A stretch of DNA of 64,000 nucleotides from Octopus sinensis (lineage: Eukaryota): assembly GCF_006345805.1 (NCBI RefSeq), contig NC_042998.1, forward strand, positions 89,404,001-89,468,000, given 5' to 3'. This document shows positions 6,437 to 60,100 of this stretch, piece by piece (position 1 is the stretch's first letter; the number at the start of each line of letters is the position of its first letter). The position numbers and the translations under genes are program-made. The notes below the pieces were generated by a model. It did no database searches, was not told the origin of the DNA, and saw only the letters and a program-made list of their open reading frames with translations.

Positions 6437-6494
<58 letters not shown>
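6437..6494 (+). repeat. (TAA)n microsatellite opening the + strand Dong train
   Basis: Perfect trinucleotide run; further runs at 7051-7134, 9280-9315, 10425-10500, 10786-10832, 11388-11509. Confidence 0.98.
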
Positions 6495-6495
<1 letters not shown>

Positions 6496-6496
<1 letters not shown>

Positions 6497-7050
6497 GCCG
6501 TGATGCAGTGCCAGGCAGTGGCTCTCATGGCTGCTGATCTTAACTGATTGGAAGTGTTATCATGTACATTGTTTTGTCTTGGCATAAAAGATAGGCTACA
6601 GCAAATATTCTGCTCAATACCGCAGATTTGCTTGTCAGTTGTTTGACCGTAACCAGTTGAGCATGTCCCTTGGTGGCTGACGATATGTGCATCTCTGATC
6701 ATGAGCAGAAGTAGTGGGGGAGCATCATAGCCGTGTGTTAAAAGGAATTCTTAGAGGTTTGGATAGTTCACCTTTAGAAACAGGGGTGGTTCGTTCAACA
6801 TCCTTAAACAATCCTTATTTAGGGACCTTTTGAGCGGGATGGGTTACTCGACCAGATGAAAATTCTAACTGGGCCCTACCTGCAAGATCATGCACTGTTT
6901 ATCTTGATATGAGATTACAATGTCGCACACATATGGTTGTGATGCATGTGCCTGCTGTACATTTATCATACGGGTGATCATGATGGGTATACTAGGCTTC
7001 GTATATTTTACCCCAGTGTCACTTTGATGGCATGCATTGCTGTCTCACTC
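6496..7050 (+). mobile_element. 555-bp non-coding interspersed element flanked by (TAA)n, copy 1
   Basis: Collinear (~90% identity by eye) with 10833-11387; identical 5' (TGCC.TGATGCAGT) and 3' (CTCACTC) ends; (TAA)n on both sides. Confidence 0.8.
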
Positions 7051-7135
<85 letters not shown>

Positions 7136-8370: not shown

Positions 8371-9198
8371 CGAGGGGCGTTCAATAAGTAATGCCCCTGA
8401 CCCACTTCCCATAGCAGTAGGGCAACGAAACTTGGAACAGTTATTAGTCTTTTTCTACATAGGAATCACCCAGAGTTACGCATTTCTCCCATCGTTTGAT
8501 GCAGCTCTGAAGACCGGTTTTGTAGAAGACCCCAGCTTGGTCCTCCAACCACGACGTGACTTCAGAAATCAAGGTTGCATCATCTGGGAAACGCTTTCCT
8601 TTCAAAAACAACTTCATGGCTGGGAAGGGGTGAAAATCAGAGGGTGCAAGGTCAGGAGAGTAGGGGGGATGGGGGATGAGTTCATAGCCGCACGCCTGTG
8701 CTTCTGATCTGGCGACACGCGAGTTGTGGATCGGAGCGTTGTCCTGCAGGAGGAGGATGCCTTTGCTGATCTTGCCCCGCCTCTTGATTTTGATAGCTTC
8801 TCTTAATTTCCTCAAAAGTGAAGCATAATAGACTCCTGTAATTGTGGCACCCTTTGCCAGGAAATCTGTCTTCACTACTCCGTCCTGGTCCCAGAAGACT
8901 GTAAGCATGACCTTGCCAGCGGAGGGCTGCACCCATGCCTTCTTTTGAGGAGGTGAGTCACGGTGCTCCCGTGGTGTGCGTCCTTTCAAATACAAAAACC
9001 GGATCACTGCTCGACACTCGACATGCTCCATTTCACACTTGACTCAGTTCAAACACCTGTAAATCGGAAACCACAATTAGTTCAGAGCTTTAATTTGCCA
9101 CTTCATCTATAGAGATATGAATAATTGCACATGCAAAATTTCAGCTAGATCAAACAACTGCAAGTGGGTCAGGGGCATTACTTATTGAAAGCCCCTCG
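8371..9198 (-). mobile_element. Mariner (Tc1/mariner) internal-deletion derivative, 828 bp, irritans-like
   Basis: 37-bp TIRs (8371-8407, 9162-9198; 1 mismatch), TA duplication at 8369-8370 and 9199-9200; transposase motifs SAGKVMLTVFWD, LLQDNAPIH, HPPYSPDLAPSDF. Subfamily is inferred from TIR and N-terminus resemblance. Confidence 0.93.
8444..9031 (-). pseudogene. In-frame deleted mariner transposase (195 aa)
   Basis: N-terminus MEHVECRAVIRFLYLKGRTPRE fused directly to HRDSPPQKKA..; HTH region, WVPHEL linker and first catalytic Asp are absent. Confidence 0.85.
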
Positions 9199-10500: not shown

Positions 10501-10782
10501 AGGTAACTAGAATGTGGAATCTGAAAACAGAAACAATTCCTATCATAGTAGGTGCATTAGGCATGATAAAAAAATATTCAGACAAATACATAACAAAAAC
10601 ACCAGGACTTAGAAACACATATAACATACAGAAAATTGCACTACTAGGCACTGCACACATCCTACGCAGAACACTTTCCATACAATAACCATCAGAGCAT
10701 CACAACAAATCACAGCACATACCCAAGGCACACAGAGCTGCGCTCGGTAGTGAAGTGAAAGCACGCTATAAAAATAAAACTA

Positions 10783-10785
<3 letters not shown>
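10501..10785 (+). mobile_element. 3' fragment of Dong family A between TAA tracts
   Basis: Nearly identical (about 3 differences seen) to the reverse complement of 41036-41320. Confidence 0.92.
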
Positions 10786-10832
<47 letters not shown>

Positions 10833-10834
<2 letters not shown>

Positions 10835-11387
10835 CCCTGATGCAGTACCAGGCAGTGGCTCTCATGGCTTCTGATCTTAACTGATTGGAAGTGTTATCAT
10901 GTATATTGTTTTGTCTTGGTATAAAAGATGGGCTACAGCAAATATTCTGCTCAATACCACAGATTTGCTTGTCAGTTGTTTGACCTTAACCAGTTGAGCA
11001 TGTCCCTTAGTGGCTGGCGATATGTGCATCTCTGATCACGAGCAGAAGTAGTGGGGGAGCATCATAGCCATGTGTTGAGAGGGATTCTTTGGGGTTTGAA
11101 TAGTTCACCTCTGGAAACATGGGTGGTTCGTTCAACATCCTTAAGCAACCCTTATTCAGGGACCATTTGAGCGGGATGGGCTACTCAACCTGAAGAAAAT
11201 TCTAACTGGGCCCCACCTGCAAGGTCATGTGCTGTTTATCTTGATATGAGATCACCATGTCGCGCACATATGGTTGTGATGCATGTGCCTGGTGTACCTT
11301 TATCAGACGGGTAGTCATGATGGGTATATTGGGCTTCGTATATTTTACCCCAGTGTCACTTTGATGGCATGAACTGCTCTCTCACTC
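10833..11387 (+). mobile_element. 555-bp non-coding interspersed element flanked by (TAA)n, copy 2
   Basis: Same length and ends as 6496-7050; (TAA)n at 10786-10832 and 11388-11509. Confidence 0.8.
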
Positions 11388-11510
<123 letters not shown>

Positions 11511-11894: not shown

Positions 11895-12520
11895 AATTTC
11901 CGAAGAAACTTTGTTTGCTGTAAATAATAATAAAGCATTCAAGGGACATCTCTGGTGGAATTCGAGGTGCATGTCTGCTGGTATCAGTGGAATTCTTGGA
12001 ATAAACACATTTTATCCCTTTCCTTGTCCAGTGAGGATTGTTGCTTCCAAAAGATGTGGATGCATTTGCCTGACAATCAGTCTTGTTCCATTGCACAGCT
12101 TTGGAGGATCCAGATTTCTCAAAAGAATTACTGGAATTCCTTTCTCCAATGTCAATTTATGAGAATGAATTCCAAGAGAATCCAAAGAATTAAGAAACTC
12201 AGTAGGAGGGTCCACATCAGTATCAATTGAGAAATAATCTTTTTCCTTAGTATTGATTGATTGCATAAGTTTCCAATTGACAATCAAGACAGTTTCACTA
12301 TTTGGCGCAAGTATGGCTCTTTCACAAAGCTAATCATGATCTTGAAAATCATGTCCAATGTATAGCCTTGGTAATAAACTCGTCTACAGTTTTGTCCAAA
12401 ATTTCACTGCCATTTGGAAAAGTGATGTCTACATTATTGTCTTGTTGAATGCTTCCATTTCCCAGATCCAGTAGCTTAGCTGTAAATCTTCCAGTATCCA
12501 AATCTCTGAATAAACTGACT
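11895..12520 (-). mobile_element. Helitron PIF1-like helicase fragment
   Basis: EFLNSLD..HKLTLEKGIPVILLRNLDPPKLCNGTRLIV..EATILTGQGKG*NVFIPRIPLIP and upstream LLDLGNG; these are typical Helitron RepHel helicase motifs, here with stops and frameshifts. Confidence 0.85.
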
Positions 12521-15821: not shown

Positions 15822-16391
15822 TAGTCAAAAAATGGAGTGAGCTGATGGAATCATTAGAGTATCGGGGAAAATGCGCTGCAGAAGTTCTTGCGGCTCTTTA
15901 CACTTTGAGTTTAAATCCCCACCGAGATCAATTTTGTCTTTCACTCTTTCGGGATCGATAAAACAAATTATGATTAGTACAGGGATCGATGGTTTTGACT
16001 AATCCTCTCTCATCAAAATCAGAGACTATTTATAATCCCGGTCACAATCATCATCATAATCACCAACGCCATAAATATTGCACTATTATCATCATCTTTA
16101 TTGTTGTTGTTATAAATGTCATCCCCACAAAATTATTCTCGTATTTATAATATTAGGCTACTTGAGAAAATATGGTCGCAAAAATTATAGTATTTAGATA
16201 ATCATTTATTAAATGTTTTCTAACATCGGCCCAATACCGGAAATTTGGTGTGGAGGAGTTCGTCTGTTACATCTATCTTCAATTCTTCACTGTTACTTTA
16301 TTTTATGATCCCGGAAAGGATGGGAAGTACATTTGATATAGGCGGCTTTTGAACTCAAAACGTAAAGAGCCGAGACAAATAATACAAGAAT

Positions 16392-16779
16392 ATGGAGGCG
16401 CAATGCCCCAGTGGTTAGGGCAGCGGACTCGCGGTCGTAGGATCGCGGTTTCGATTCCCAGACCGGGCGTTGTGAGTGTTTATTGAGCGAAAACACCTAA
16501 AGCTCCACGAGGCTCCGGCAGGGGATGGTGGTGATCCCTGCTGTACTCTTTCACCACAACTTTCTCTCACTCTTACTTCCTGTTTCTGTTGTACCTGTAT
16601 TTCAAAGGGCCAGCCTTGTCACTCTCTGTGTCACGCTGAATATCCCCGAGAACTACTGTAAGGGTACACGTGTCTGTGGAGTGCTCAGCCACTTACACGT
16701 TAATTTCACGAGCAGGCTGTTCCGTTGATCGGATCAACCGGAACCCTCGTCGTCGTAACCGACGGAGTGCTTCCTTTTA
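16392..16779 (+). mobile_element. tRNA-derived SINE (family S2) with 11-bp TSD, nested in a reversed S1 remnant
   Basis: A-box-like TGCCCCAGTGG and B-box-like GGTTTCGATTCCC; TSD AATACAAGAAT at 16381-16391 and 16780-16790; reversed partial relative at about 22260-22345. Confidence 0.87.
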
Positions 16780-17395
16780 AATACAAGAATGTAACATTTC
16801 TGTTAATCCCTAAATACAATCCCTAAATAAACATTTAGTGCTTTTGTTTTTCTAATATAAACAGACGACCAGAACTCTGAGGGGAGGGAACAGTCGATTA
16901 TATTTACCCTACTACTTTATTGGTACTTTATTTTATCTAATCTAAGAGGAAAAATGGAAGAGGAAAATGCAAAGTTGACCCCAACGTAAAAAGTCAGCAC
17001 ATATACCACCTTAATAAGAACTAAATCAGTTAATGAAATAATAAACTGCAAAACCTGTAAATTTATCAAAACATTAAAAAATTACTTAAAATATTTACCG
17101 TGTCTTAAGGAGTAAAACTAGTTATACAAAATAGCCGAAACAAAATATATCAAATGATGCTACGTGCATATCAATCCCAAAATGGGTATGTCAAAATACA
17201 TGTCTCAGTTATGTTTTCCTTTGTGAACGACGCCTAAGATTGATTTTATCTACTTCTATGATAACCGGGTAAAGACTTTTCCTTATTTGACAAGCTCTAG
17301 TAAGAAGTCGGTTTTTTAAAAATTAATTTCAGAACATCTTGTACTGTATCTAAGTTACTGAGTCCCTTTGTCTCCTATTTTAATGATATACACCT

Positions 17396-17430
17396 TACTA
17401 ATTATTTATTTTCGTTTGCCGCAGGTAAGT
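17396..17430 (+). other. Juxtaposed 3'/5' splice signals (candidate recursive splice site)
   Basis: TACTAAT branch-like motif, AG-free pyrimidine tract, CAG|GTAAGT. Confidence 0.4.
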
Positions 17431-17972
17431 AGCATTTTTGTAGAAGAACATAAATATATGTATATTAACAATTGCAAGAGAATTTTAAGTGACAAATTGA
17501 AATTCACCCCACTTCACATTAGCCTGTAACAATTGCTGTTTGGAATAAGATATCAATTCCTCTGTTAGTAATGTATAAATATTCATTTATGATCCATGTC
17601 CTAATTATATTATGCTGGCATATGAATTGACTTTGGTGAGAGAGGAATAATATAAAAGCACAATAGACAAAGCCATTTTATAATTACTTCATGTATCAGA
17701 TTAACAGCAATCTTATGTATGGCGAAACTACAATCTATAAAATACATCACATAAGCACTAATGGTGGTCTGTAAATATACACTCCGAGTTTACTCCGAGT
17801 TTTCATAATCACATTGTTAATTGCAGCAAAATGACAGTACCATCTAACTTGATATATGTCTATATACTATCATTCTATGATATATGTCTATATACTATCA
17901 TTTGCTCTGCATCGTGACCTTTGACTCCATTGCTGCCATTTACATCGAAGCAGTAGAGATGGGGGCTATTTA

Positions 17973-19234
17973 TCAGGTCATCCCATAAGTTCTGTCCGAA
18001 TTTTGAATAAAGAAAACAAGTGATCAAATGTTATATTTAAATGAAATTTAATCACCAAAGTACTTGCCCTGATTATCTATTATTTCCTTCCATCTATTTA
18101 CAAGCTTTTTAATCCCATCAATGTAAAACTATTTTGGTTTCAAAGAGAAGAACTCTGTAATATGAGTTTCGACCTCCTTCTGGCTTGAGAAAGTTATGTT
18201 CTCCAAATGATTCTGTAAACTACGAAACAAATGGTAGTCTGAAGGAGCGAGGTCGGGAGAGAAGGTGGATGAGGATTTTTTTTCCAACCAAGTTCTTCCA
18301 TCTTCTGTGATGTGATCTTTGTAGTGTGGGGTCGCACATTGTCCTGATAAAACATCACTCCTTTTCGATTCACTAAAGCGGGTCTTTTTCCCTTCAAAGC
18401 TCTAATTGCTGACAGTAGACTTGAGCATTGATTGTTGCATTAGGTAGTAACAATTCTAAGTGAATTACTCCTTTGCAATCCCATCAGATAGAGGGAAGAA
18501 CCTTTTTCCCATGAAGTTCCCCTCTCGGTTGTGGCTGAGCTTTTTCCCCTTTTACCAAGCCACTGTTTACAACATTTCGATAGAAGAGCCATTTTTCGTC
18601 ACCAGTCACAAGTCTATCCAAAAAGGATGAAATGACTTCGCGAGAATGGAGAGAAGAGCAGATGTCAACTCGAGATTTGCAGTTGCTTTCGGACAATTCA
18701 TGAGACACCCATTTTCCAAGTTTAGGAACCTTTCCAAGTTGTTGACGATGAACAGTTGTATGGTTTGAACTAAGCCTTATTGCCTATACTTCAACTGATA
18801 ATGCAGGATTTTCTTCAAGTAATGCCCCAAGGAGCTTATCATCAAACTCAACTGGACGTCCTGTTCGATCTTCAAATTCAAGGTTGAAATCTACACTTCC
18901 GAATTTTGCAAACCATCTTCTGCAAGTTCTTTCATTCAAGCATTCTTTCCCAGAAACTGAGTGTATGTTTCGAGTCGCTTCGGCTGCAGAGTTTCCTTTT
19001 TTGTACTCATAAAGTATTATGTGCCTTAAACGCTCTTTGGATACTTTCACGTTAGAAAGGGTTTTAATCAAAGAAATTTTAATTCTATTACTCTGTAAAA
19101 TAATATTTAATTAGTTTAAATGTACACAAATGCATAAAACTAATTTTTAATTCTATTAGACATTCTAAAATACAATTATATTGCATTCAATTTTAAAAAA
19201 GGTAACATCGAACAGAACTTATGGGATGACTTGA
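17973..19234 (-). mobile_element. Full-length decayed mariner transposon (1262 bp)
   Basis: 27-bp TIRs TCAGGTCATCCCATAAGTTCTGTCCGA (2 mismatches), TA at 17971-17972 and 19235-19236; pieces RHIILYEYKKG..TCRRWFAKF, WVSHEL, LVTGDEKW, QDNVRPH, HPP/SPDLAPSDYHLF broken by frameshifts. Confidence 0.93.
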
Positions 19235-19963
19235 TATTTCTTCCGTAACTCATTTGAATGAAATGCAAATATGTTACTCCCCTTCCCACGTGACAAAGTG
19301 GTATCATTTGGTCACTATAAAGTCAGACAGTCAATCGTTGTAAGAGGTCAGTAGTAGTAAAGTGATTGTATGAGTTCTCAGTTGGAGTCAGTTACGTGAT
19401 ATATACGAGTTCGAGTTACCGTCAAGGTAGATCTTCCAAAGTCATTGTCTTGCAGAGCTGTCAGCGATAGCGTGATAGATGAGTCAAAGATAATAAGACG
19501 CGGAATATCTCCACAAAATAATAGTGGCGACAAGAATACTACAGTGCCGACAATTACATAAAAGTAGACGAGGATCCACATTATAACATATATATATATG
19601 TATGTGTGTGTGCGCGCGCACGTGTATGTGTATGTGTGTAAGATACTTTCATGGCATGGAGAAATGATAATTCGGCATATTTACGTAACGTGCCTCGTGT
19701 CATCCTCTCCGGATTGAGCAACTCTGTCGCAGACTTTGGGATTCGCGCCAGTTAAATTTATTATGATTGCTACGAACAAAGGGGCTGCAAATCTTGGTCG
19801 TTTATTTTTCCTTTCTTTTTTTCGTTTTTATTTACCATTTACCTTCTCGTTCCTCTTTTTTACATAAACCTTCTCGCTTTTTCTCGCGCTCCTTCGTAGA
19901 CAAGCATTTTGGTTTACTACGACTGAACATGAAAACGAACTTTAATGTGTGTGTGCGTATGCG

Positions 19964-23209: not shown

Positions 23210-23246
<37 letters not shown>

Positions 23247-23501
23247 TGTGTTCGACGTCTTTTTGGTGTCCTGTACACATATATGCGTGTATATGTACAT
23301 GTAGAGGTAGGTACGTACATATATGTTTATATATATGCATATATTCTATTTTATTAACATATTATATATATATATATATATATATGTGTTCGACGTCTTT
23401 TTGGTGTCCTGTACACATATATGCGTGTATATGTACATGTAGAGGTAGGTACGTACATATATGTTTATATATATGCATATATTCTATTTTATTAACATAT
23501 A

Positions 23502-23534
<33 letters not shown>

Positions 23535-32122: not shown

Positions 32123-32683
32123 TACGAGCACATGTGTATTTATCTGTGTATGGTTTAAACTGTATTTTGCTTTCTTTTACTTATTTCTAGCCGATTATAA
32201 TAGGTTGAGGTACAGAGTATTAATTTTCTTCATATAATCATTTTCTTATATTAATACTTGATATAAAAAGACGTTGCTTCATGACCGATAAATGTATATA
32301 ATTAATGCGAATGCATCCTTTACCGCAAACGGAAGCCAAATCTTCCCAAAAGTTTCTAACGTTCTATAGTATTATATATAGACTGGGGTTGCAATTATAA
32401 CAAATACCTATTCATATTTCCAACTTTAATTCTATAGTAGTTGTAAAGCAAGAAACATGACAAGATTAAATCTTTAATATTATTGTCTCCCACATTGTTA
32501 TAGTTAATATCATTTTCAATGAATTCTTAAACTGTCAAGCGTTGACAGAAGATGACTCAAAGATAGGTGATCTGTTGGTTTATTTCTGTAGCATTGTATT
32601 AAGAACAGCGTCGGAACCCATTAGATCATTGGTATGCTACTGAAAACTATATGTTCATATAATTATTCTGGTGAGAATGTTGG

Positions 32684-32710
32684 ATTTATTTTTGCCTTCC
32701 CCAGGTACGT
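32684..32710 (+). other. Juxtaposed 3'/5' splice signals (candidate recursive splice site)
   Basis: ATTTATTTTTGCCTTCCCCAG|GTACGT. Confidence 0.3.
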
Positions 32711-33746
32711 TGAAGTATTTGGGTACAATTGTGGAGAGTTAATTACTCTTGCCCCTAATGCTTATCTATTGAATGGTCATTTTATTCCTGTATTGTACGG
32801 ACTTTATAGATAATAGAGTGGATTCAGTGAGGGCTACATTGGTTTACTATATGTTCTTGTGTGAATAAAAAATGATACTTATTCAAACCGCCTGTGAAAC
32901 TATGGATAATTCAGAGAATCCCCTTTTTTTTCTTTTTTCCTTCTCTCTTTCTTTCTTTCTTTCTTTCTTTCTTCTTTCTTTCTTTCTTTTCTTTCTTTTT
33001 TTTGACATCAGTGGAATATCCCAAAAGTGGTTCGAAGTCCCAACTAAAGGGTAGCCAACATATTTTGCAACAAAGCAACAAATTGTATTGAGAACAATTA
33101 ATGAAATAAAATACATATTTCATTTTTGTCATTTGATATTTACACGAAATGACTTATTTTTTACTATTTTCTGTAAAATGTAAGTTTATTTAGTAAAGTT
33201 TATTGCAAGTTTACTTATCGTAACTTAAACTGTAAGTTTACTTACCGTCAGCCTATTGTCAGTTTATTTATTGGCTTCAGATGTGTAGGAGGGAGGAAAT
33301 AGTAATGGCCACACCTTTTTCTCAATGGTTTCATTGATGTACTTGAGAGGAAATTACTAAAATGACGAACTGAAGATGAGGCGTCAATTGTCCTGAAAAG
33401 AGTTAAGAGCAGTTTTAATTAAGATCTTCAAGATCACTTAACCTAAAGTATGTCAATGTCGCGACTCCCAACTCCATGCCATTGGAAGTTATCTTCCTGA
33501 ATACATTTAAATAGCATCTTATCCTTTTATACATTGAAGAGACAATAACATCCTGACTCTGTTACTGAATGCTCACACATGGACCGCATTACTTATTAAA
33601 GCAATATACAAGTAATATTCAGTTGTTTATGTTACCTATTATTTTTGCAGTTCAAATTAAAGTTGATAAAAAAATTCTACAATTTACTGAATATTTCAGT
33701 GAACAATACTGGTCATATGTCTGAAATACATAAATACATACATACA

Positions 33747-41132: not shown

Positions 41133-43358
41133 TTATTGTATGGAAAGTGTTCTGCGTAGGATGTGTGCAGTGCCTAGTAGTGCAATTTTCTGTATGTTAT
41201 ATGTGTTTCTAAGTCCTGGTGTTTTTGTTATGTATTTGTCTGAATATTTTTTTATCATGCCTAATGCACCTACTATGATAGGAATTGTTTCTGTTTTCAG
41301 GTTCCACATTCTAGTTACCTCTATTTCCAGGTCTTTGTATTTTGAGAGTTTCTCCATTTCTTTTAGAGACACGTTGTCATCAGCCGGTATTGATACATCA
41401 ATTAGAAAGCATTTTTTTTCTTCATGGTCTCTGACAACTATATTTGGTCTGTTGGCCTTAATTTCTCTATCTGTGTGTATCGGCATATCCCAGAGTATGG
41501 TTGCTTTCTCGTTTTCTGTGACCTTTTCTGGTGTGTGCCTATACCATCTTTTTTCTGTTGTTATTCCATAATGTTGGCATAGCTTCCAATGTATGTAGGT
41601 TCCAACTCTGTCATGTCTGTGAATATATTCCTTCTTAGCCAGGACTGGGCAGCTAGAGATAATATGATTTATTGTTTCTTGTCCATCTCCACATATTCTG
41701 CAGTTACTTGTAATATTTCTTTTCATTACATGTTTTTGGTAATTTCTGGTGGGGAGGCTTTGGTCTTGTGCTGCAATTAAAAATCCCTCTGTTTCTGCTT
41801 TGAGTCCTGAGCTTCTCAACCATTGCTGGGATTTTTCTTTGTCTATTTCTTTTGCGTTTAGTTTAGTCCAGTATTTACCATGAAGGGGTTTTTCTTGCCA
41901 TCGTTTTATCATGGCTCGTTGCTGTTCTATTTTTAGTTTGGATTTCATTTGTTTTATAGCTTTTGTTGTTTCTTCATCATCTTCTTCTTCTTCTTTGTGT
42001 TTATTAGGTGGTATGATTTCTTGTTTGTATTTGTCAGCTTCCTTAAATACTGAGAACAGTTTTTTGTTTTGCTCGTGTTTTGCTGCTATCTGGATCAGTT
42101 TTCCTTCCTTCTGAAGTAGGTATTTTTGCAGTCCTATGGTGGTTCTTTTATAGTAGTTTTCCAGCTGTATAAGGCCTCTACCACCTATACGTTGTATATA
42201 TAGTCTTTCTATGTCAGATTTTGGGTGATGCATCCTAGATCCTTTCAGTATTTTTCTTGTTTTCCTATCTATTTTGGACAGTTCATTTCGTGTCCAGTTA
42301 AGGATATTGTAGCTGTAACTTATAACTGGGACAGCTAAAGCGTTGATACCTATTATCTTGTTTTTAGCATTGAGCTCTGTGTTTAGTATTGATCTAACTC
42401 GTCTATAATATTCTTTTTTTATTTTCTCTTTCATTTGTGTGTGTTGTGTCTTATCTAGTTCATGGATTCCTAAGTATTTGTAAGTTTGGCTTTGGTCTAA
42501 TTCTTTTATTTCATTGGTTTTATCTAGTGTGATGTTGTTACTCTTAACTAGTTTTCCTCTTTTCATGGTTACTTTGGCGCATTTTTCTAATCCAAATTTC
42601 ATATCTATTTCTTTGGTAAATCCATGAACTGTCTTTAATAGTGTTTCCAGCTGTTTGTCATTTGCAGCGTATAGTTTTAGGTCATCCATATATAAAAGGT
42701 GGCTGATCGTTTTGCCGTAACATTTATATCCGCATCCAGTTCTATTTAGCATATCAGATAGAGGTGACAGTGCCAAGCAGAAAAGGAGTGGAGAGAGCGT
42801 GTCTCCCTGGAATATTCCTCTTCTAATGGGGATGTCTTTGGTTTTCATGAGTCCTTCTTTTGTTTGGAGGTGTAGGACTGTTTGCCATTTATTCATAGAG
42901 TGCTCTATGAATGTTATGATTGTTGGTGCTACTTTGTTAATGGCTAGTGTTTCGAGGATCCATGTGTGGGGGATGCTATCAAACGCCTTTTTGTAGTCAA
43001 TCCAGGCCATACTGCGGCCTTTCTTCTTTCTGTGGCGGTCTTCAGTTACGGCTTTATTAATCATTAGTTGATCTTTACAGCCATATGAGCCTTTGCGGCA
43101 TCCTTTCTGCTCTTCTGGGAACAGTTTGTTTTCGTCCAGGTGCTTGTTCAGCCTTTGCGATATCACTGCAGTAAATGCCTTGAACATAGTAGGGAGGCAG
43201 GTTATTGGTCTGTAGTTTTCTGGTTTTGTTGTTTCATTTGATTTGGGAATTAAGATGGTTTTCCCCTTCGTGAACCATTCAGGCATTGTCTCTGGCTCTG
43301 CTAGTATGCTGTTAAAGTTTTCAGCCAGCTTTTTGTGCATTCCTGTTAGATATTTCAA
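41133..43358 (-). pseudogene. pol: RT-zinc finger-REL endonuclease ORF (741 aa fragment) of Dong family A
   Basis: RT motifs NYRPITCL, QKGCRKG, WIDYKKAFDS, GIFQGDTLSPLLF, YMDD, FGLEKC, YKYLG; R4-type HHPKSDIERLY..GGRGL; CCHC finger CRICGDGQETINHIISSC; REL region ILWDMPIHTD..RPNIVV..LIDVSIP..EKLSKYKDL. Separated from upstream coding pieces by an in-frame TGA and a frameshift. Confidence 0.92.
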
Positions 43359-43480
43359 CCAGAAGTTGGGGATCTTGTCATGCCCAGGTGCCTTCCAGTT
43401 GCTTAGTTTTTGCAGTGCCTGGGTGACCTCTTCAGTTGTTATGGGGGTTCAAAGTTGTTCAGATGCCGAGTTTGTTATTT

Positions 43481-44771
43481 TCATACTCCTTTCTTTGGCT
43501 GTTCGTTCGCCGACCATATTTCTTTCCAGAATTCTTCCAATTCTTCTGCCGTTGGTGCTGCAGTGACTTCTATTTTATTTTTGCCCAGTTCTTGGTAGAA
43601 CTTTTTGGGGTCGGAGTTGAACTTTTTGTTCTGTTCAAAGAAGCGTTGGCGTTTCTCGTACCGGCGGATCCTTTGAGCTTTGGCAAGGATATCTTGCTTC
43701 AGCTTTTCTTTTATCTCCGGCAAATCTTTTTCTGTGATGTTATATTTGCGGAGCATTTTTGTTCTCTTTTTGTTGCTCAGTAGCGTTACTTGTTTGCTGA
43801 TTTCATTAAGAATCGACAGGTCTTTTCTAATTTTTTTAATTTTGTTTTGGATGTTATTTATCCACAGGGTTTGTTTGGGTGGTGGTACTCCGGTTTGGGC
43901 GGGTTTGGGTGAGTATCCAGCTTCTTTTGTGGCTGCAGTGGCTGCTGCGTATATCAAGTCATTTAGTTCAGTGATATCACTTTTTTTGTTTCAGTGGCTA
44001 GTTCAGTGACGGCTAGGTTTATGTTGTTTATAATTGGTGTTGTTATTGCGTTTATTTTTATTCTTGGGAGGTATGGTCGGTAGTCCATTTTGAGCTCTGT
44101 GGTTTTCAGTTCTTTGATTATTTTATTTTTATATTATCATAATCATTAGGCTCCCCTTCGTTGTTTACATCGTATTTGTTGGGAATGTTGCGTTTGTCTT
44201 CGTGTTTTACAGTTTCAGTGTTTATATTATTGGGCATTGTTGTGTGGCTTCTATCTACATTTTCTTGGTGTATTTTTTCTTTTAAATGTTCTATTTCTAT
44301 TTCTGATATTTTTTTGGCTTTGAGAATGAATCTTCGTACGTTAGCTAATTTATTAGGGTTCATTGCTGTATCCAAGTCTATATCTCTGTTATTTTCCTTC
44401 CATATTTTATATGTATGTGTTGTTGTATTTTCATTTTGTGGGTAGAGCATTGCTGTGAAGTATGCGTGTAAGATAGAAATGTATTCCTCACGTGTCCATT
44501 TACGTCTTTTGGGTTTTAATTGCGGGACATGAGGTACAACGTCCGGCCCATTATTTTGACGGTCGTCATTTTCGTAGGGTACCGGTCCGTTTATTTCTGT
44601 TGTCACATTATTTCGCACGTGTAGTTTTTCGTACATTTTTTGTTGTAGGTTTAATGTACGTACCGCTCGATTGTTATTCTTGGGTTGAATAGTATCGGTG
44701 GCATTTAATTTCTTCGTAGTTCCTTTGTACATGGTGTTTGAGGTCGGGGATGATCGTGTTGTTCCACGCAT
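43481..44771 (-). pseudogene. N-terminal coding region of Dong family A (two frameshifted pieces)
   Basis: RRKWTREE..NKLANVRRFI (44118-44771) and W..IQNKIKKIRKD..AQRIRRYEKRQRFFEQNKKF..FYQEL..EEFWKEIWS (43481-43957) resemble the pre-RT region of R4-clade proteins; frameshift in an A-rich run near 44120. Confidence 0.8.
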
Positions 44772-45040
44772 GTTTACATGTGTTGTGTTAGAGGTGGAGA
44801 TAATATCGAGTCAAAATACATCATTTCGTTTCGAAAATAGTAATAAATTTCAATTCGTATTACTTACTCGGATATAGTCCAATTCTTTGTTAGTAAATCT
44901 TTGGCTCCATAGGGTGTCCTTGTTTTCGATGTTTGTGGATAGATTTCGGAGCTCTGTATTTTCCTTCTTACATCTTAAACGTCCCCGGTGTCTTCCCTTA
45001 AACGTCCCCGGTGTCTTCCCTTAAACGTCCCCGGTGTCTT

Positions 45041-52570: not shown

Positions 52571-53100
52571 TGTAGTGACGTCATATTCTAGTGGGCGCAC
52601 ACGCAACGTCATTCTTCAGTGTTAGTGTGCGCAACGTCCTTCTTCAGTGTGCGTGTGCGAGGTTGGAACTTTCTGGAACCTTCTGGAAATGCATAAGGAA
52701 GTTCCCTCATGCACATGCGCTAGAGACTGAAGAAGAAATTCTATCGCGTTCCTTAATAGCGTCGTGGACTTGAGACACAGCGATAGAAGAGAAAGGACGT
52801 ATTTTTAAACGTGTGTTCAGCCTATTTTCCTGTCCCAGACGCTTAGGATTTGACCTGTTCTGTTGCTGCTGAATCGTTGTAAGAAACTTACAAACGTTAG
52901 AATTCAGCCTTGCTGTGTTCAGCTAGGTGGATACCAGTATACCATCGTGTTTCATTGTTGAATAAGAGAATAAAGAATCGTATATATTTTTAAAGTTGCG
53001 TTTTGTTACCGACTGGTAGTTTCTAAACAAAAAGAAAGGACATTGTGTTGCACCCAAGTTGCACCCCAAAAGTATAAAGAAGCAACCAGTTCCCTTTACA
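52571..53100 (+). repeat. 5' LTR (530 bp, TG...CA)
   Basis: About 97% identical to the 3' LTR by manual count, plus two ~10-bp duplications; AATAAA present. Confidence 0.95.
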
Positions 53101-53101
53101 G

Positions 53102-53113
53102 TGGTGACCCCGA
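53102..53113 (+). promoter_or_regulatory. Primer-binding site complementary to tRNA-Trp 3' end
   Basis: TGGTGACCCCGA, 1 nt after the 5' LTR; complementary to the ..UCGGGGUCACCA end of eukaryotic tRNA-Trp. Confidence 0.85.
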
Positions 53114-53639
53114 GTTCTGGTCATAGACCATAGAACACTCAACCAAGTTTCCCGAGTTCTGGTCATAGACCATAGAACACTTAACTGAAATCTAGAATCT
53201 ACCTAGTCTGAACCAATCAACCCGCCGCAGTCATCATCTTTCAACAATTTGTCAGCCATTTCATCGTCGACGAAAAAAAAATTGACTTAAGCTGTTAGTG
53301 CGATCCGTGCACCAAGCATAACAGGCAGTCAAACTTAAGAAGAGACAGTTTAAAATACATAACATAAAAAAAAATGTTCATGTTAGCACACACGCACGAA
53401 AAAAAATTCGTTTTAGACGCGACGAAGGTTGGTAAAATATATAAAAAAAAGAATTTTTTATTCTATGTGCATACAGTACAAAAAAAAAATTTTGGTAAAT
53501 TGTACATGTAAAAAATTTATTGGTTCAATTGCTGGTCTTGTTTTTCCTTTTTTCCTTGTTGCGTCTGTTCAACTTTGATTCGTTGTCATTTACCTTTCCT
53601 TTGACAGAATCATCTAGTAAAGTTTAAAAACTACAAAAT

Positions 53640-53950
53640 GTCTATGGCATCATCTATGGCATCATGCTGCTTGTGTCTGCTCTGAATCATCTGCAGCCTC
53701 AATTGATAGACTTACTAAAGAAATAGAATGTCTCACCAAAAGGATGAACGCGATGTGTCGCGATGGCAAGCGATTTTCAAGATCGCGTAGTCGTAGCCGT
53801 TCTTCATCTCGTTCTACACAGTCAAAGTCCAAACTGTGTTGGTATCACTCAAAATTTGAAGAGAAAGCACATAAGTGCATACAGCCATGCAACTATAAAA
53901 GATTTCAAAGAGGAGTTGAGCACGTCAACTTCCTCCACATCGTTTTCTAG
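53640..53950 (+). pseudogene. gag: Gag C-terminal remnant with CHCC motif
   Basis: RSRSRSRS..LCWYHSKFEEKAHKCIQPC; the N-terminal capsid region appears missing. Confidence 0.8.
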
Positions 53951-56374
53951 TTATCGTGCATTTTTCGTTAAGGATCTAGTGTCGAAGAAATACTTCATGG
54001 TGGACACTGGTTCTTGTTGCAGTATTTGGCCTCTGCGTCTCACAACCGACAGGCCAAAACGATCTAATGTTACCTTGCAAGCTATTGACTCGTCACCAAT
54101 AGCCACATTCGGTCAAATCACTTTACGCCTTGGCATACATCTTCGTCGAGATTTTCAGTGGGTTTTTGTCATTGCTGACATTCCGCATCCTATTTTAGGT
54201 GCGGATTTTCTAAATAACTTTGATCTATTGGTAGATGTCAGACGTCGGAGGCTAGTCGACGGTTCAACTACACTCTCCACGCCGACCAGAGAATCTACCG
54301 ATTCAGCTCTTAGCCCGACATTTTTTGTTTCTACATCTGGAGATGTTTTTCATTCTCTATTGGCTTCTTTTCCAGAGCTACTTGATATTACCTTTAAAAT
54401 GGCAAAACCCGTACACTCGACATTCCATCTTATTACAACTACTGGACAGCCTGTTTTTTCGCGCCCACGGCATCTTGCACCTGACCGTCTTAAAACGGCT
54501 AGGGCTGAGTTTGAGCATATGCTCCAGCTTGGTCTGATACGCCCATCCACCAGTCCATGGGCATAACCCCTTCATTTAGTTCGAAAAGGGGATACAGATT
54601 TTCGCTCGGTGGGAGATTATCGGCGTCTAAATTCTGTGACGATTCCGGACAGATATCCAATTAGGAATCTCAATGACTTTTCAGCGAATCTTCATGGCTG
54701 TACCATTTTTTCTAAGGTTGACCTCATACGTGCTTATCATCAAATACCGGTCAACCCAGACGATGTTCCTAAAACGGCAATTACCACTCCTTTTGGTTGT
54801 TTCGAATTTCTATACATGAGTTTTGGTTTGCGGAACGCCACTAGTACATTCCAACGTTTTATAGATGAAGTTATTCGTGGACTTGATTTTGTTTTTGCGT
54901 ATGTCGATGATATTCTCATCGCAAGTGATACGCATGAAAATCATCTCCAGCACTTGTCTCAGCTTTTTCAGCGTCTTCGCGACTATGGTGTTCGCTTTAA
55001 TCCAGACAAGTGCGTTTTTGGGCAATCATCTCTTGATTTTCTCGGTCATTATATTGATTCGAGTGAAATCAAACCACTCTCGTCTAAAGTCGATGCAATT
55101 CAGCGCATCGCACCACCTTCTTCTTTGCGTAATTTCTATCGACGCTTCATATACCGGTGTGCGGACAAGTTGTTTCCTTTAAAGAAGATGCTAAAGGGCA
55201 ATTCTAAAAAGGATGCCCGTCGTACTCTTTCAGCTGAAGCACTGCCTGCCTTTGAGTTAGTTAAAAAGGAACTAGCTTCAGTTCCTGTTTTAGCACATCC
55301 GGCTCCTGATGCTCCACTTACTTTATCTGTGGACGCATCAGATTCTGCAGTTGGCGCTGTCTTGCAGCACACCGTAGATGGTGAAACTAAACCTTTGGCT
55401 TTCTTTTCTCCTAGACCGTTAGTACCTGAGAAACATCAACGTTCTGTTTTTGATGCTCTTCATTCATTGTCACATCCGGGTATCTCTGCCACAGTAAAGC
55501 TTGTTACTGCTCGGTTCTTCTGGCCCAATATGCGACAATCGATTACCTCTTGGGCACGCTCTTGTTTGAGATGCCGGAGTGCTAAAGTCCATAGACACGT
55601 TCGTGCTCCACTTGGACAGTTTTCTTCTCCTGAGGCCCGTTTTCGTCATGTCCACCTTGATTTGGTTGGACCATGGCCTGTGAGTCGCGGGTTCTCATAT
55701 ATTTTAACTTGTATCGATCGTTTCTCACGTTGGCCGGAAGCTATTCCTATAGAAGACATTTCTGCTGAAACTGTTGCGAAAGCTTTCGTGTCTAATTGGA
55801 TTTCTAGGTATGGTGTACCGTCCAGTTTAACCACAGATCGTGGTCGACAATTCGAAGCGGTTTTATTTCGTGAGTTATCACGAATCCTGGGGATGCATCA
55901 TATACGCACCACTAGTTACCATCCTGCTTCTAATGGGATGGTGGAGCGTTTCCACAGGCAACTTAAGGCCGCGTTGCGTGCCTCGCCGAATCCACAGTCG
56001 TGGACTGAATGTCTTCCTATCGTCCTGCTTGGATGTCGGACTGCGATTAAAGCAGACCTTGGTTTTTCTTCTGCCGAGCTCTTGTATGGTACCAACTTGA
56101 CATTAACGGTCGTTCGGAGACCGTATCCGTAGATCGTCTTAAAAGGGCATATTTTGAGGTGTCCACATCTTTTGATGACCCCACTGCCACAACCATCGTT
56201 GAACCTTCACATGCACCTTTGACAACACCACCATTTACACATGCACCTTTATCAACACCAACATCGGCAACACCACCTTCGTCGTCGCAGCCCGCTTCGA
56301 ACAAACCTTATGTTACGAGGTCAGGCAGAACTGTTCACTGGCCAAAGAAACTTTCAAAGACGATTTATATTTGA
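53763..56374 (+). pseudogene. pol: Pol (protease, RT, partial RNase H, integrase) with premature stop and deletions
   Basis: PR FMVDTGS and ILGADFL; TAA at 54564-54566 in PWA*P; [30 protein letters not shown]; RH only [18 protein letters not shown]; [37 protein letters not shown]; C-terminal [14 protein letters not shown] in another frame. Confidence 0.93.
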
Positions 56375-56580
56375 CATTCTCAATTGACTTCCCAGTGACA
56401 GTTACGATACTAATTGAACTTTGTTCATTTGAATATTATTTTTTCTTTTCCTTTGCTGCATGCTTGTTTATATTATAGAATTTTGTTTTAATTTGTCATA
56501 TTTTGTGCCATTTTGGTGATTTGGTATCCACCTTATATTCTGAAGCCACTACAAGGAATTTTGTTTCGTGCTTCCGCACT

Positions 56581-56592
56581 CGAGGGGGAACC
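56581..56592 (+). promoter_or_regulatory. Polypurine tract
   Basis: CGAGGGGGAACC immediately before the 3' LTR. Confidence 0.8.
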
Positions 56593-57102
56593 TTTAGGTG
56601 ACGTCATATTCCAGTGTGCGCACACGCAACGTCATTCTTCAGTGTGCGTGTGCGCAACGTCCTTCTTCAGTGTGCGTGTGCGGGGTTGGAACCTTCTGGA
56701 AAGACATAAGGAAGTTCCCTCATGCACATGCGCTAGAGACTGAAGAAGAAATTCTATCGTGTTCCTTAATAGCGTCGTGGACTTGAGACACGGCGATAGA
56801 AGAGAAAGGACGTATTTTTAAACGTGTGATCAGCCTATTCTCCTGTCCCAGACGCTTAGGATTTGACCTGTTCTGTTGCTGCTGAATCGTTGTAAGAAAC
56901 TTACAAACGTTAGAATTCAGCCTTGCTGTGTTCAACTAGGTGGATACCAGTATACCATCGTGTTTCATTGTTGAATAAGAGAATAAAGAATCGTATATAT
57001 TTTTAAAGTTGCGTTTTGTTACCGACTGGTAGTTTCTAAACAAAAAGAAAGGAAATTGTGTTGCACACCAAAATTGTAAAGAAGCAACCAGTTCCCTTTA
57101 CA
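56593..57102 (+). repeat. 3' LTR (510 bp; 5' TG mutated to TT)
   Basis: Follows the PPT, ends TTTACA, then the GATC TSD. Confidence 0.95.
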
Positions 57103-60100
57103 GATCCATTGGTGATATGAACTAAACGCTAAAATTTGATACTATGGCATATATGCCGTGGCAGAAATAACTATGACAGAATATATGTTGAGCAAGAATT
57201 TAAATCTACAGCGAATAGACATTGCTATACAAATATAATTCTCTTCTACGCTATTTATCAACATTTAACAAACCAAATTTCGAGTTCTTTACGTCAGTTG
57301 ACAATAAAGATTTATTCGAAAATAATGAAATAATTTAGTTAAATCAAGTATAATCTGAAAAATTTTCGGCTTCCGAGCCTTATTTTAGCGTACTATCCTA
57401 ATAACGAGTGAAGTCCACTTAAGCTATACATTTAATTTTAACTCGAAGTAAAGTCGCCAAAAAATGTATTTTAGTATGGTGTATTCAGCCGCCATTCAAG
57501 AAAAATAGAATAGTTCATATCATCACGAATTCCTGATAATCTGTGGCTTTGACGTGATTTCTAACTCTGCTTAAAGTCTTTTCACATCACTTATTTTATA
57601 ATGTCCATGCAAAAGGCATTAATATTACGCAGTTATTTCATAACATGTTCGGGTTTCATGCCAGAGTAAAAAGAAACTAATATAAAATTTCTAGAGAGCA
57701 AGACTTCAGCATCCCGACAACTCGACCTGGCGGCACAAATTGGATTCTTCTTATTTAGCCCTGTGCTACGGATGTCTTAAGGCGACCGACAGTCAAGGTG
57801 CTTCGTAGTATCTGTCCCTACTTCTTTACGATCGGAGTCCAAATCCCAACAAAGTCAACTTTGTGTTTCATACTTTTCGGTGTTGATAATATAAGTACCA
57901 GTCAGGAGCTCCAGATTAACGGAATTGTTAGAAAGTTGGAGAAAATGGTTTGTAATTTATTTTGTCTCAGCTCTTTTTGCTTCTAATACTTAGATGTAAG
58001 CATAGAACGGGAAAATGATGTCATATAAAGACTATATTTAAAGAAAGACAACACGCAACTACCATTGTATTCTTTCATGCAAATTTTATGACAAGCCCAG
58101 AAGGGTTACTGTAAAGTCATTATGGCTTCTTTCATGGAACTGATGACTTAGAATGGAATAAATACCTTGGTAAATGCATGAATATCACATCCATTCTTTC
58201 TGTTTTATCATGAATTAATAACACATATCAATACTTTCAAGAAGTGCTAAATTGGCATTTCGCTGAATAAATCCTAATTACAATTATACTCGCAATATAA
58301 CGGCGTAGGTTTTTTTGAATTCGGTAGGACATAAGTTAAGCTTGTTCCAATTCGAGGCTGAAGCTACGTCTCTCTGGTGATGAGAACGTGGGTCTAGTTA
58401 AAGTATATTAATTTAATGAATTGAAACATAGAATACAAGGAACTTTGCAGGGATAGAACAATCGATTATTTCAAATGCTCTTATTGACCACTACTTATTT
58501 TATCGACCACAAAAGGCAAAGGTCAGCCTCGACAGAATTAGCTCTCAGATCATAAAGATGCAGCTAACCGTCACATGGCAGTATGTCTGATGTTGTACTG
58601 ATTCTACAAATCCTCTTCCGCTGGTTAAACTATTATAATGACGATAGAACTTGTTTTTAATGTTATTGAAGTAAAAACAAAATAAAGAAAAATAGAAATA
58701 ACTCCCTGCAAACAGATTCTGAAGTCCAGAAGCGATTGCTCTTGTTTGAGTAAAAAAATCTCACAGTTGTACTTTTTCCTCATTCTAAATATGCATTCCT
58801 GCACCGTACTACAATATTTTTATTTACAGTATTGATACGCCATTCCACTAGAATAGAGCTATTTAACAGAGTCACTTAATCTGTAAAATTTAAGGCTACA
58901 AATATCCTTCAGGAAGAAATGAACATGAATATATCCCATTTGATTTTATTCCTATCGTATGTAGAGTTGTATGCATAGTTATAAAACGAATACATTATTT
59001 AACAGATGTTATCACTAAAGAAAAAAATGTTTACATGAAAGATTTTGATAAATAAAAGTCATAAGTAGTAAACAACTATTTAAATTTTATTGTCCCTTTA
59101 TAATCAGTTAGCATTTGTTTTTCTGCAGTGAAATTATATTGATTCTTCTAATATATTTTCTTGTTAATTTGTTAATTAAAGAAAGAATTTCATTTTATGA
59201 TACTGAGTCACAATCTTAACACAACAAAATACGAAAACTTGTCAATACAGCTAATAACCTGTCAGCATTTCTCAAAGTCATACTATATGGTTTCAAAAGG
59301 AAAATACTTGGCAAAATTATTCACAGAAAAACAATATTTTTATTTTAGGTATAAGATTTCAGAAATTTTATATTTGACGTTTTCATATGTTTATTTATTT
59401 TGCAGCGAACTTTAGAATACAAAGACTATTTGAATGTAAATATCTCCCCATGAGACAAATCAGAATTTATGACTATCTAAAAATTTATTTCCACAGGTCA
59501 AAGAAAATTCTTTGCTTTGAGACGTTCCCTTTCAACTGGGTGGAGTTAGAAGAGCACGCATTAAATAGTGCATGAATTTTCTTACGTGCATTTTTCACTA
59601 TCAGTTTCGTTATTTTTCTATGCGAACTGTTATTATGCTATGCTATATTATGATTTGACTATTTTTCAGAAACAGAATCCCTAGAACTTCAATAGAAATA
59701 CTTCAATAGAAAACAGAGAAAATTAAGTATAACACGAAGCAGTGAACTTTTCTATTTTAATCTGAACTTTTTTAGATGTAATGTTGCTAGAGTAGTTTGT
59801 TTTTCCTTCGTATTATTTGACACAAAATGTGTGCTTCTAATCATATTATATTTTAATTATTGTAGTTTAAAACACTCCTCCTTCGCTTAATTCTAACTAT
59901 ATAGGTCGGAATACCAAATGATGTTTTAACACAAAATTTGTTCATGCCACCCCCATATCCACCACCAAAAAACAAATTATAACGAAAAAATGCTCCATGT
60001 CCAAACGTAAATTATTAAAATGGAATATCTAGATACATGTTACAGAACAACCCGATCTAAATATCATTGGATAGAAGAGGAAAATATATGGGCAATCAGA

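What the first reader, a model, noticed from the sequence alone, without database searches (positions are those of the whole stretch)
17396..17430. Textbook recursive (ratchet-point) splice site candidate
Seen: TACTAAT (near-perfect branch consensus; branch A 23 nt upstream), an AG-free U-rich tract, then CAG|GTAAGT, so a 3' splice site is immediately followed by a perfect 5' splice site. Known: AG|GT zero-length exons remove very long introns stepwise in Drosophila and vertebrate neural genes. Inference: this exon-poor 64 kb may be a giant intron processed recursively; I am not aware of this being described in molluscs. Caveat: the 9-mer alone is expected about 0.2 times per strand by chance; the branch point and tract are what make it notable.
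Basis: partly seen in the sequence, partly recalled or inferred. Interest (0 to 1): 0.7.

Follow-up and report, generated by a model that had tools for sequence, protein, structure and literature searches.

The report
Unproven recursive splice motif in octopus
A sequence that looks exactly like a "recursive" splice site is present in this Octopus sinensis DNA, but nothing shows it is transcribed, conserved or inside a gene, so it is most likely a chance motif.

Summary
On the + strand there is TACTAAT (17396-17402), a 75%-pyrimidine tract inside a 60-nt AG-free zone, then CAG|GTAAGT with the junction at 17424|17425. This is the only CAGGTAAGT on either strand.

The 9-mer alone is expected about 0.2 times per window. 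With the tract and AG-free zone the expectation falls to about 0.005. A looser summed-score definition gives 0.08-0.15 per window, which means hundreds to thousands of chance sites per 2.7-Gb genome.

The window is Octopus sinensis CM016860.1:89,404,001-89,468,000. It is full of transposons, and no host exon was detectable. The TT at -5/-6 seen in 99.5% of fly ratchet points is CC here. The only downstream donor is 211 nt away, which is no better than chance. Transcription and conservation could not be tested.

In its favour, a second strong AG|GT lies at 32705 on the same strand, and large introns of invertebrates are 4-22x enriched for such sites.

My estimates: chance about 0.55, true recursive site about 0.2, conventional exon edge about 0.12.

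The parts
17396..17402 (+). Branch-point-like heptamer TACTAAT. The putative branch A is at 17401, which is position -24 relative to the junction.
   Evidence: TACTAAY occurs 4 times on the + strand and 12 times on the - strand of the window, and falls within -45..-13 of a random position 0.3% of the time. This is a motif match only; no lariat data exist.
17363..17421 (+). AG-free zone of 60 nt (17363-17422). Its last 20 nt (17402-17421) are a 75%-pyrimidine tract interrupted by A at -21 and -17 and by G at -12, -7 and -4.
   Evidence: The tract score lies at the 98th percentile of all window positions. Positions -5/-6 are CC, not TT.
17422..17430 (+). CAG|GTAAGT: a 3' splice-site consensus joined directly to a 5' splice site fully complementary to U1. 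The junction is at 17424|17425.
   Evidence: a unique occurrence. It is the highest-scoring of the 329 AGGT sites on both strands.
17425..17635 (+). Hypothetical cryptic recursive-splicing exon of 211 nt with stops in all three frames. It would end at the only decent downstream donor, TTG|GTGAGA at 17636.
   Evidence: A donor this good within 250 nt is expected by chance about 27% of the time, so this does not support the model.
17333..17424 (+). Hypothetical conventional 92-nt exon (acceptor aatttcag|A, donor CAG|gtaagt), lying inside an open frame of 40 codons (17304-17423).
   Evidence: The peptide has no credible relative among 1.84 billion representative proteins; the only hit is a tandem-repeat junk ORF. 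It has no PDB match either.
32682..32710 (+). Second strong juxtaposed site, TTTATTTTTGCCTTCCCCAG|GTACGT, with the junction at 32704|32705, 15.3 kb downstream on the same strand.
   Evidence: It is the second-best score in the window (19.8 against 20.2; the third is 12.95). Its flanks are not homologous to those of site 1. It has no clear branch motif and carries C at +4.

Best explanation
Most likely this is a fortuitous juxtaposition of splice-site-like words in AT-rich, transposon-laden, probably non-genic or unannotated Octopus sinensis DNA, and it does nothing. At most it would act as a cryptic splice site or U1-binding site if a + strand transcript happens to run through it.

What is shown: the motif exists, it is unique in the window, and it sits in non-repeated sequence 546 bp upstream of a decayed mariner element. 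What is inferred: that it has no function. That inference rests on the genome-wide number of chance sites, the absence of any detectable host gene around it, and the missing fly hallmark at -5/-6.
For: The exact 9-mer is expected about 0.2 times per window. That is roughly 8,000 copies in a 2.7-Gb genome.

Summed-score matches at least as good as this one are expected at 0.06-0.12 per 100 kb per strand. This equals the complementary-strand and intergenic background measured in 13 animal genomes, 0.07-0.12 per 100 kb (PMC2773006).

Even the strict composite (0.005 per window) implies about 200 chance sites per genome.

The window is CM016860.1:89,404,001-89,468,000 of O. sinensis. Every Pfam hit among the 148 longest ORFs is a transposon domain or a weak (E > 5e-4) match that looks like chance. 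No splice-flanked ORF looks like a host exon. There are no Rfam or tRNA features that would mark a host gene's strand.

The gene list for window 43,763-64,566 holds only two LTR-retrotransposon ORFs, both present in NCBI nr and UniRef. The tool demonstrably lists spanning genes when they exist. No annotated protein-coding gene therefore covers the right third of the window.

Positions -5/-6 are CC, whereas 196 of 197 fly ratchet points have TT. The only downstream donor is 211 nt away and no better than chance. Non-transposon sequence shows no A/T strand asymmetry.
Against: The composite of exact consensus, 60-nt AG-free zone, 75% pyrimidine tract and TACTAAT at -24 is rare: 0.002-0.01 per window, and 0 of 600 simulations with the strict branch motif.

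The two best AG|GT sites in the window are both on the + strand and far ahead of the third (20.2 and 19.8 against 12.95). P is about 0.002-0.008 for two or more on one strand.

Their spacing of 15.3 kb resembles the median fly recursive segment of 16.4 kb. Large introns of all five invertebrates tested carry 4-22x more such sites on the sense strand than on the antisense strand.

The annotation status of the site itself, at 17.4 kb, could not be read.
Confidence: 0.55

Rival explanations
1. This is a genuine recursive splice site (ratchet point). A + strand pre-mRNA with a long intron is spliced from its upstream exon to the acceptor at 17424. The regenerated exon|GUAAGU donor is then used again to remove the rest of the intron. 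Recognition would probably go through a cryptic exon (17425-17635) that is discarded. The site at 32705 could be a second ratchet point or the acceptor of the next exon.
For: The match to (y)nncag|gtaagt is perfect. The candidate branch A at -24 lies inside the -36..-21 range mapped for fly ratchet points. The AG-free zone is 60 nt long. The composite is rare, at 0.002-0.01 per window. A second site lies on the same strand 15.3 kb away, with P of about 0.005. Sea urchin, bee, beetle, mosquito and fly all show sense-strand enrichment of such sites in large introns. The putative cryptic exon has stops in all frames, as fly cryptic recursive exons typically do.
Against: There is no evidence of + strand transcription or of a host gene, and no annotated gene spans 43.8-64 kb. 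Any host gene would have to end within 26 kb downstream of the site. Positions -5/-6 are CC rather than the near-invariant fly TT, and G at -4 and -7 weakens the tract next to the AG. The nearest usable downstream donor is 211 nt away, against roughly 50 nt in flies, and is no better than chance. Conservation is untested. In large, vertebrate-sized genomes such motifs sit at background density.
Confidence: 0.2
2. This is an ordinary exon boundary. Either 17425 is simply the donor of a conventional upstream exon (for example 17333-17424, 92 nt, acceptor aatttcag|A), or 17424 is the acceptor of a conventional, possibly non-coding, exon that happens to begin with GTAAGT.
For: By my own rough estimate, a few percent of real donors are exactly CAG|GTAAGT, so genuine donors are about as numerous genome-wide as chance 9-mers. 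An open frame of 40 codons ends at the junction, and a usable acceptor lies 92 nt upstream. The acceptor side carries full 3' splice-site signals.
Against: The 40-residue peptide has no credible relative among 1.84 billion representative proteins or in the PDB. The ORF that reads across the junction has no homologue. A 40-codon open frame in one of three frames is expected roughly 15% of the time at this base composition. A T-rich, AG-free 60-nt stretch is atypical for coding exon sequence. No neighbouring exons were detected.
Confidence: 0.12
3. This is a splice-site-like element carried by an unrecognised non-autonomous transposon or other dispersed repeat. Its copies would share the motif, and the site would have no locus-specific role.
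For: The window is dominated by transposons. A mariner element with 29-bp terminal inverted repeats starts 546 bp downstream. Short dispersed repeats lie at 16286-16685.
Against: The interval 16.7-17.97 kb has no second copy in the window and no convincing flanking inverted repeats. It has no transposon protein homology. Genome-wide copy number could not be checked.
Confidence: 0.05

Closest known systems
Drosophila zero-nucleotide-exon ratchet points (Ubx, kuz, luna and others; Hatton 1998, Burnette 2005, Duff 2015)
   Same: A 3' splice site and a 5' splice site are juxtaposed around AG|GT with a GTAAGT donor. The candidate branch A lies in the same distance range. The surrounding DNA is exon-poor. 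A second similar site lies about 15 kb away, close to the median fly segment length.
   Different: In flies the sites are defined by junction reads, saw-tooth coverage, lariats and strong conservation, none of which is available here. TT at -5/-6 is present in 99.5% of fly sites and absent here (CC). The fly tract is more prominent. No host gene or long intron has been shown.
Vertebrate recursive sites with recursive-splicing exons (Sibley 2015; Blazquez 2018) and fly cryptic recursive exons (Joseph 2018/2021)
   Same: There is a YAG|GT core, and a possible downstream donor (17636) would define a premature-stop-containing exon for exon-definition recognition.
   Different: The candidate exon is 211 nt long, and its donor is no better than chance. 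Nothing is known here about host gene length, brain expression or donor competition.
Computationally predicted RP-sites in large introns of invertebrates (Shepard, McCreary and Fedorov 2009, PMC2773006)
   Same: The evidence is of the same kind: a consensus-score match to (y)nncag|gtaagt. My background rate of 0.06-0.12 per 100 kb per strand matches their complementary-strand rate.
   Different: Their inference rests on sense-versus-antisense enrichment across thousands of annotated introns. Here there is one window of unknown genic status, and no mollusc was in their set.
Chance pseudo splice sites and pseudo-exons in intronic or intergenic DNA (for example the 'zero-length exon' pseudo-exon of Grellscheid and Smith 2006, as cited in PMC2773006)
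   Same: These are consensus-quality sites without a demonstrated role in removing a long intron.
   Different: Those cases were characterised within known transcripts. Here even transcription is unknown.

Membership tests
Recursive splice site / ratchet point (fly type) | Juxtaposed acceptor and donor: (y)n n c a g | g t a a g t | tested here: met
   CAG|GTAAGT at 17422-17430 is unique in the window and is the top-scoring of 329 AGGT sites.
Recursive splice site / ratchet point (fly type) | Prominent pyrimidine tract with TT at -5/-6 (196 of 197 fly sites) | tested here: not met
   Positions -5/-6 are CC. The tract is 75% pyrimidine with G at -4, -7 and -12 (criterion). This feature may be specific to flies.
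Recursive splice site / ratchet point (fly type) | Branch point A about 21-36 nt upstream of the acceptor | tested here: inconclusive
   TACTAAT places an A at -24, inside the fly range. This is a motif match only, without lariat evidence.
Recursive splice site / ratchet point (fly type) | Lies on the sense strand inside a long intron (over 11 kb in flies) | tested here: inconclusive
   No host exon was detected. No annotated gene spans 43.8-64 kb. The annotation at 17.4 kb itself could not be retrieved.
Recursive splice site / ratchet point (fly type) | Sequence conservation of the AG|GT core across related species | not testable with these tools
   No orthologous octopod DNA was reachable. 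The exact 22-mer is absent from the metagenome contigs, and the ORF across the site has no relative in the protein collection.
Recursive splice site / ratchet point (fly type) | RNA evidence: exon-to-site junction reads, saw-tooth coverage, recursive lariats | not testable with these tools
Recursive-splicing exon model (vertebrate and fly cryptic exons) | A downstream 5' splice site that defines a short cryptic exon (about 50 nt in flies) and competes with the regenerated donor | tested here: inconclusive
   The only donor scoring above 5 within 470 nt is TTG|GTGAGA at 17636, giving a 211-nt exon with stops in all frames. The chance expectation is about 0.27 (criterion).
Conventional internal coding exon ending at 17424 | Open reading frame with protein homology, flanked by an acceptor and a donor | tested here: not met
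   A 40-codon open frame and an acceptor 92 nt upstream exist, but there is no credible homologue among 1.84 billion proteins or in the PDB. A non-coding exon is not excluded.

The most novel reading that the evidence does not exclude
The site at 17424|17425, possibly together with the one at 32704|32705, is a working ratchet point in a long intron of an Octopus sinensis gene that ends before window position 43.8 kb or is not annotated. It would be the first recursive splice site documented in a mollusc or any lophotrochozoan. It would also show that stepwise intron removal accompanies the very large introns of cephalopod genes.
Probability: 0.2. Interest if true: 0.55.

Novelty: new member of a known kind. 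Interest (0 to 1): 0.3.

Why it matters
Recursive splicing has been shown experimentally in flies and vertebrates, and it has been predicted from motif enrichment in a few other invertebrates. In the searched library no paper links it with cephalopods or molluscs.

Cephalopods combine vertebrate-sized genomes and very long neural genes with an invertebrate ancestry. Whether they use ratchet points bears on how long introns are handled across animals. A single unvalidated motif does not answer that question.

The practical value here is a precise genomic coordinate, CM016860.1:89,421,424|89,421,425, with a partner at 89,436,704|89,436,705. Both can be checked in minutes against public O. sinensis and O. 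vulgaris RNA-seq and the RefSeq annotation.

A genome-wide count of such motifs on the sense versus the antisense strand of annotated octopus long introns would be far more informative than this one locus.

Tried and rejected
- **Repeat check.** I looked for the site inside a repeat. Self-BLAST and the repeat finder show 16.7-17.97 kb is single-copy within the window. The nearest element is a mariner at 17971-19236.
- **Host exons.** Pfam on the 148 longest ORFs returned only transposon domains and a few weak, probably chance hits. A scan for acceptor/donor-flanked ORFs returned only transposon-internal or junk candidates.
- **Intronic RNA genes.** Rfam and tRNA scans for features that would reveal the host strand found nothing.
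- **Conventional-exon test.** phmmer of the 40-aa ORF against 1.84 billion proteins gave one spurious tandem-repeat hit. The PDB gave none.
- **Orthologous DNA.** The ORF spanning the site has no homologue and is not a called gene. The exact 22-mer is absent from JGI metagenome contigs.
- **Source and annotation.** Look-ups of the LINE, mariner and LINE-fragment ORFs failed. The gag-like ORF of the LTR element succeeded and identified the assembly, but its locus reaches only back to window position 43,763.
- **Organism from the LINE reverse transcriptase.** The best hits were only 56% identical, which was uninformative.
- **Strand asymmetry.** A/T skew in non-transposon sequence is about 0.
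- **Homology between the two AG|GT sites.** There is none beyond the selected core.
- **Second-site ORF (32625-32810).** It has no Pfam or PDB match.

Full report
**The observation**

The + strand reads TACTAAT (17396-17402), TTATTTATTTTCGTTTGCCG, then CAG|GTAAGT (17422-17430). The putative branch A at 17401 is 23 nt before the G of the acceptor AG. CAGGTAAGT, and even AGGTAAGT, occurs once in the 64 kb and not at all on the - strand.

The nearest upstream AG is at 17361-62, so the AG-free zone is 60 nt. The tract is only moderately pyrimidine-rich. It is 75% pyrimidine over -23..-4, with G at -4, -7 and -12 and A at -17 and -21.

**Is it more than chance?**

The 9-mer alone is expected 0.10-0.22 times per strand under Markov orders 0-4, and 0.195 times per window in 600 order-3 simulations.

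Adding context lowers the expectation:
- The exact 9-mer with tract >=75% Y and 28 nt AG-free is expected 0.005 times per window.
- A relaxed core YAGGTRAG with tract, AG-free zone and a yTrAy branch motif is expected 0.01 times.
- With TACTAAY added, there were 0 occurrences in 600 simulations.
- Using context frequencies measured on the real window gives about 0.002 per strand for the exact 9-mer.

A position-weight score that allows trade-offs gives a higher figure. It used approximate metazoan matrices written from memory, so the values are indicative. Sites scoring at least as high as this one are expected 0.08-0.15 times per window, or 0.06-0.12 per 100 kb per strand. That rate matches the complementary-strand and intergenic background of 0.07-0.12 per 100 kb measured for 'RP-sites' in 13 animal genomes (PMC2773006).

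Scaled to a genome of about 2.7 Gb (my recollection of the assembly size), chance alone yields roughly 8,000 exact 9-mers, a few thousand score-level matches and about 200 strict composites. The site is an outlier within its window. It is not an outlier within its genome.

**Where the window comes from**

A gag-like ORF of an LTR retrotransposon (53763-54563) is a gene on record in NCBI assembly GCA_006345805.1, chromosome CM016860.1. The fetched locus is identical to the window over 20,238 bases. This places the window at 89,404,001-89,468,000, assuming forward orientation, which the round start coordinate supports.

A paper in the library gives GCA_006345805.1 as Octopus sinensis (taxonomy). 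The junction is at CM016860.1:89,421,424|89,421,425.

**What surrounds the site**

The window is a transposon landscape:
- A LINE with an intact 741-aa reverse-transcriptase ORF at 41133-43358 on the - strand.
- A 99%-identical 333-bp piece of the same LINE at 10501-10833.
- An LTR retrotransposon at 52575-57103 with LTRs 93% identical and an RT-RNaseH-integrase ORF.
- Mariner fragments at 8447-9043.
- A decayed mariner with 29-bp terminal inverted repeats at 17971-19236.
- A Helitron-type Pif1 fragment (placed near 12.0-12.3 kb by eye).

Among the 148 longest ORFs every Pfam hit is a transposon domain or a weak (E > 5e-4) match that looks like chance. Acceptor/donor-flanked open frames give nothing that looks like a host exon. 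There are no Rfam families or tRNAs. The interval 16.7-17.97 kb that holds the site is single-copy in the window and has no flanking inverted repeats.

**Is the window a giant intron?**

The two LTR-element ORFs are in NCBI nr and UniRef, so the gene table for this assembly reflects an NCBI annotation. For window 43,763-64,566 that table lists only those two ORFs. A control look-up in a coral genome shows the tool does list genes that run across a whole locus, marked 'runs over the end of the locus'.

So no annotated protein-coding gene spans the right third of the window. The premise that all 64 kb form one intron is not supported there. A + strand gene containing the site would have to end within 26 kb downstream of it, or be unannotated.

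I could not obtain a locus covering 17.4 kb itself, because no ORF near it is a gene on record. Non-transposon sequence shows no A/T strand asymmetry.

**Comparison with defined recursive sites**

Fly ratchet points have these properties (Duff et al.):
- They lie in introns of 11-133 kb.
- The segments they remove have a median length of 16.4 kb.
- Their branch points lie at -36 to -21.
- They have prominent tracts, with TT at -5/-6 in 196 of 197 cases.
- They are strongly conserved.
- They were identified from junction reads and saw-tooth coverage.

They are recognised through a short cryptic exon of about 50 nt that ends at a second donor (PMC8605326).

At this site the core and the branch distance fit. 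Positions -5/-6 are CC. The only usable downstream donor is TTG|GTGAGA at 17636, which gives a 211-nt exon with stops in all frames. Chance expectation for such a donor is about 0.27. Conservation and RNA evidence were unreachable: the 22-mer is absent from metagenome contigs and the ORF across the site has no relatives.

**Evidence in favour**

Scoring all 329 AGGT sites puts two far ahead of the rest, and both are on the + strand. They are 17425 (20.2) and 32705 (19.8; TTTATTTTTGCCTTCCCCAG|GTACGT), while the third scores 12.95.

Two or more sites at that level on one strand have P of about 0.002-0.008. This is a post hoc statistic. The flanks of the two sites are not homologous, and they lie 15.3 kb apart.

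In sea urchin, bee, beetle, mosquito and fly, such motifs are 4-22 times denser on the sense strand of introns over 50 kb than on the antisense strand. In vertebrates the ratio is 1.0-1.5. No mollusc was tested. Octopus has an invertebrate ancestry but a vertebrate-sized genome, so either regime is possible.

**The conventional-exon rival**

Frame b is open for 40 codons up to the junction. An acceptor (aatttcag|A) lies 92 nt upstream. The peptide has one hit among 1.84 billion representative proteins. That hit is a tandem-repeat translation matched in five stretches, which is not evidence of a gene. It has no PDB match. A coding exon is therefore unsupported, but a non-coding exon cannot be excluded.

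**Weighing the readings**

I combined rough genome-wide rates. These are my estimates, not measurements:
- Chance sites of this quality: a few hundred.
- Conventional boundaries with this context: a few tens.
- True recursive sites: anywhere from tens to several hundred, depending on whether octopus behaves like vertebrates or like other invertebrates.

I then adjusted for three things: the second site (in favour), the CC at -5/-6 (against) and the absence of a spanning gene 26 kb downstream (against). The result:
- Chance, with no function: about 0.55.
- Recursive site: about 0.2.
- Conventional exon boundary: about 0.12.
- Repeat-borne element: about 0.05.
- Other: the remainder.

**Novelty and interest**

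If real, this would be a new member of a known kind, the first recursive site reported in a mollusc. The library holds no paper linking recursive splicing with cephalopods or molluscs. A specialist would find that plausible rather than startling.

As it stands this is a well-formed candidate that sequence alone cannot settle. The coordinates given allow a quick check against public annotation and RNA-seq. A genome-wide sense/antisense census would answer the broader question better than this single locus.

Noticed in passing
window 32682-32870 (+): A second consensus-grade AG|GT (CCCCAG|GTACGT, junction 32704|32705) is followed by a 35-codon open frame, a stop codon at about 32810, and AATAAA at 32864-32869. 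It could be a second ratchet-like site or the acceptor of a small terminal exon of a + strand gene. The ORF has no Pfam or PDB match.
   Followed up: partly
whole window: The window is Octopus sinensis assembly GCA_006345805.1, chromosome CM016860.1, positions 89,404,001-89,468,000. Forward orientation is inferred from the round start coordinate.
   Followed up: yes
window 17971-19236 (-): A decayed mariner/Mos1-type element with 29-bp terminal inverted repeats (93% complementary) and a frameshifted transposase (HTH_48 and DDE pieces). It starts 546 bp downstream of the splice-like site.
   Followed up: partly
window 52575-57103 (+): An LTR retrotransposon with 527-bp and 506-bp LTRs 93% identical. 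Its gag-like ORF (267 aa) and pol ORF (RT, RNase H, integrase; 438 aa from the first ATG) are both annotated as proteins in NCBI nr and UniRef. They are the only annotated genes in 43.8-64.5 kb.
   Followed up: yes
window 41133-44810 (-) and 10501-10833 (+): A LINE with an intact 741-aa reverse-transcriptase ORF and an upstream ORF1-like frame. A 333-bp fragment of its 3' end, 99% identical, lies 30 kb away in the opposite orientation, which suggests recent activity. The closest proteins in the 5.8-billion-sequence collection are only 56% identical.
   Followed up: partly
window 6448-7135 and 10786-11472 (+): A 688-bp direct repeat, 93% identical and each copy holding an (AAT)n array, brackets a block of LINE and mariner fragments. 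It may be a segmental duplication or the ends of a composite element.
   Followed up: no
window 60988-61096: A degenerate interstitial array of telomere-like hexamers (GTTAGG and GTTATG variants of TTAGGG).
   Followed up: no
window 12015-12329 (-): An ORF resembling the Pif1-type helicase 2B domain, likely a Helitron remnant. Pfam reported one member with PF21530 at E = 2.4e-15. I assigned the hit to this ORF by eye from its sequence.
   Followed up: partly
window 23220-23525: A 138-bp unit is repeated 2.2 times at 98% identity, embedded in (AT)n arrays.
   Followed up: no
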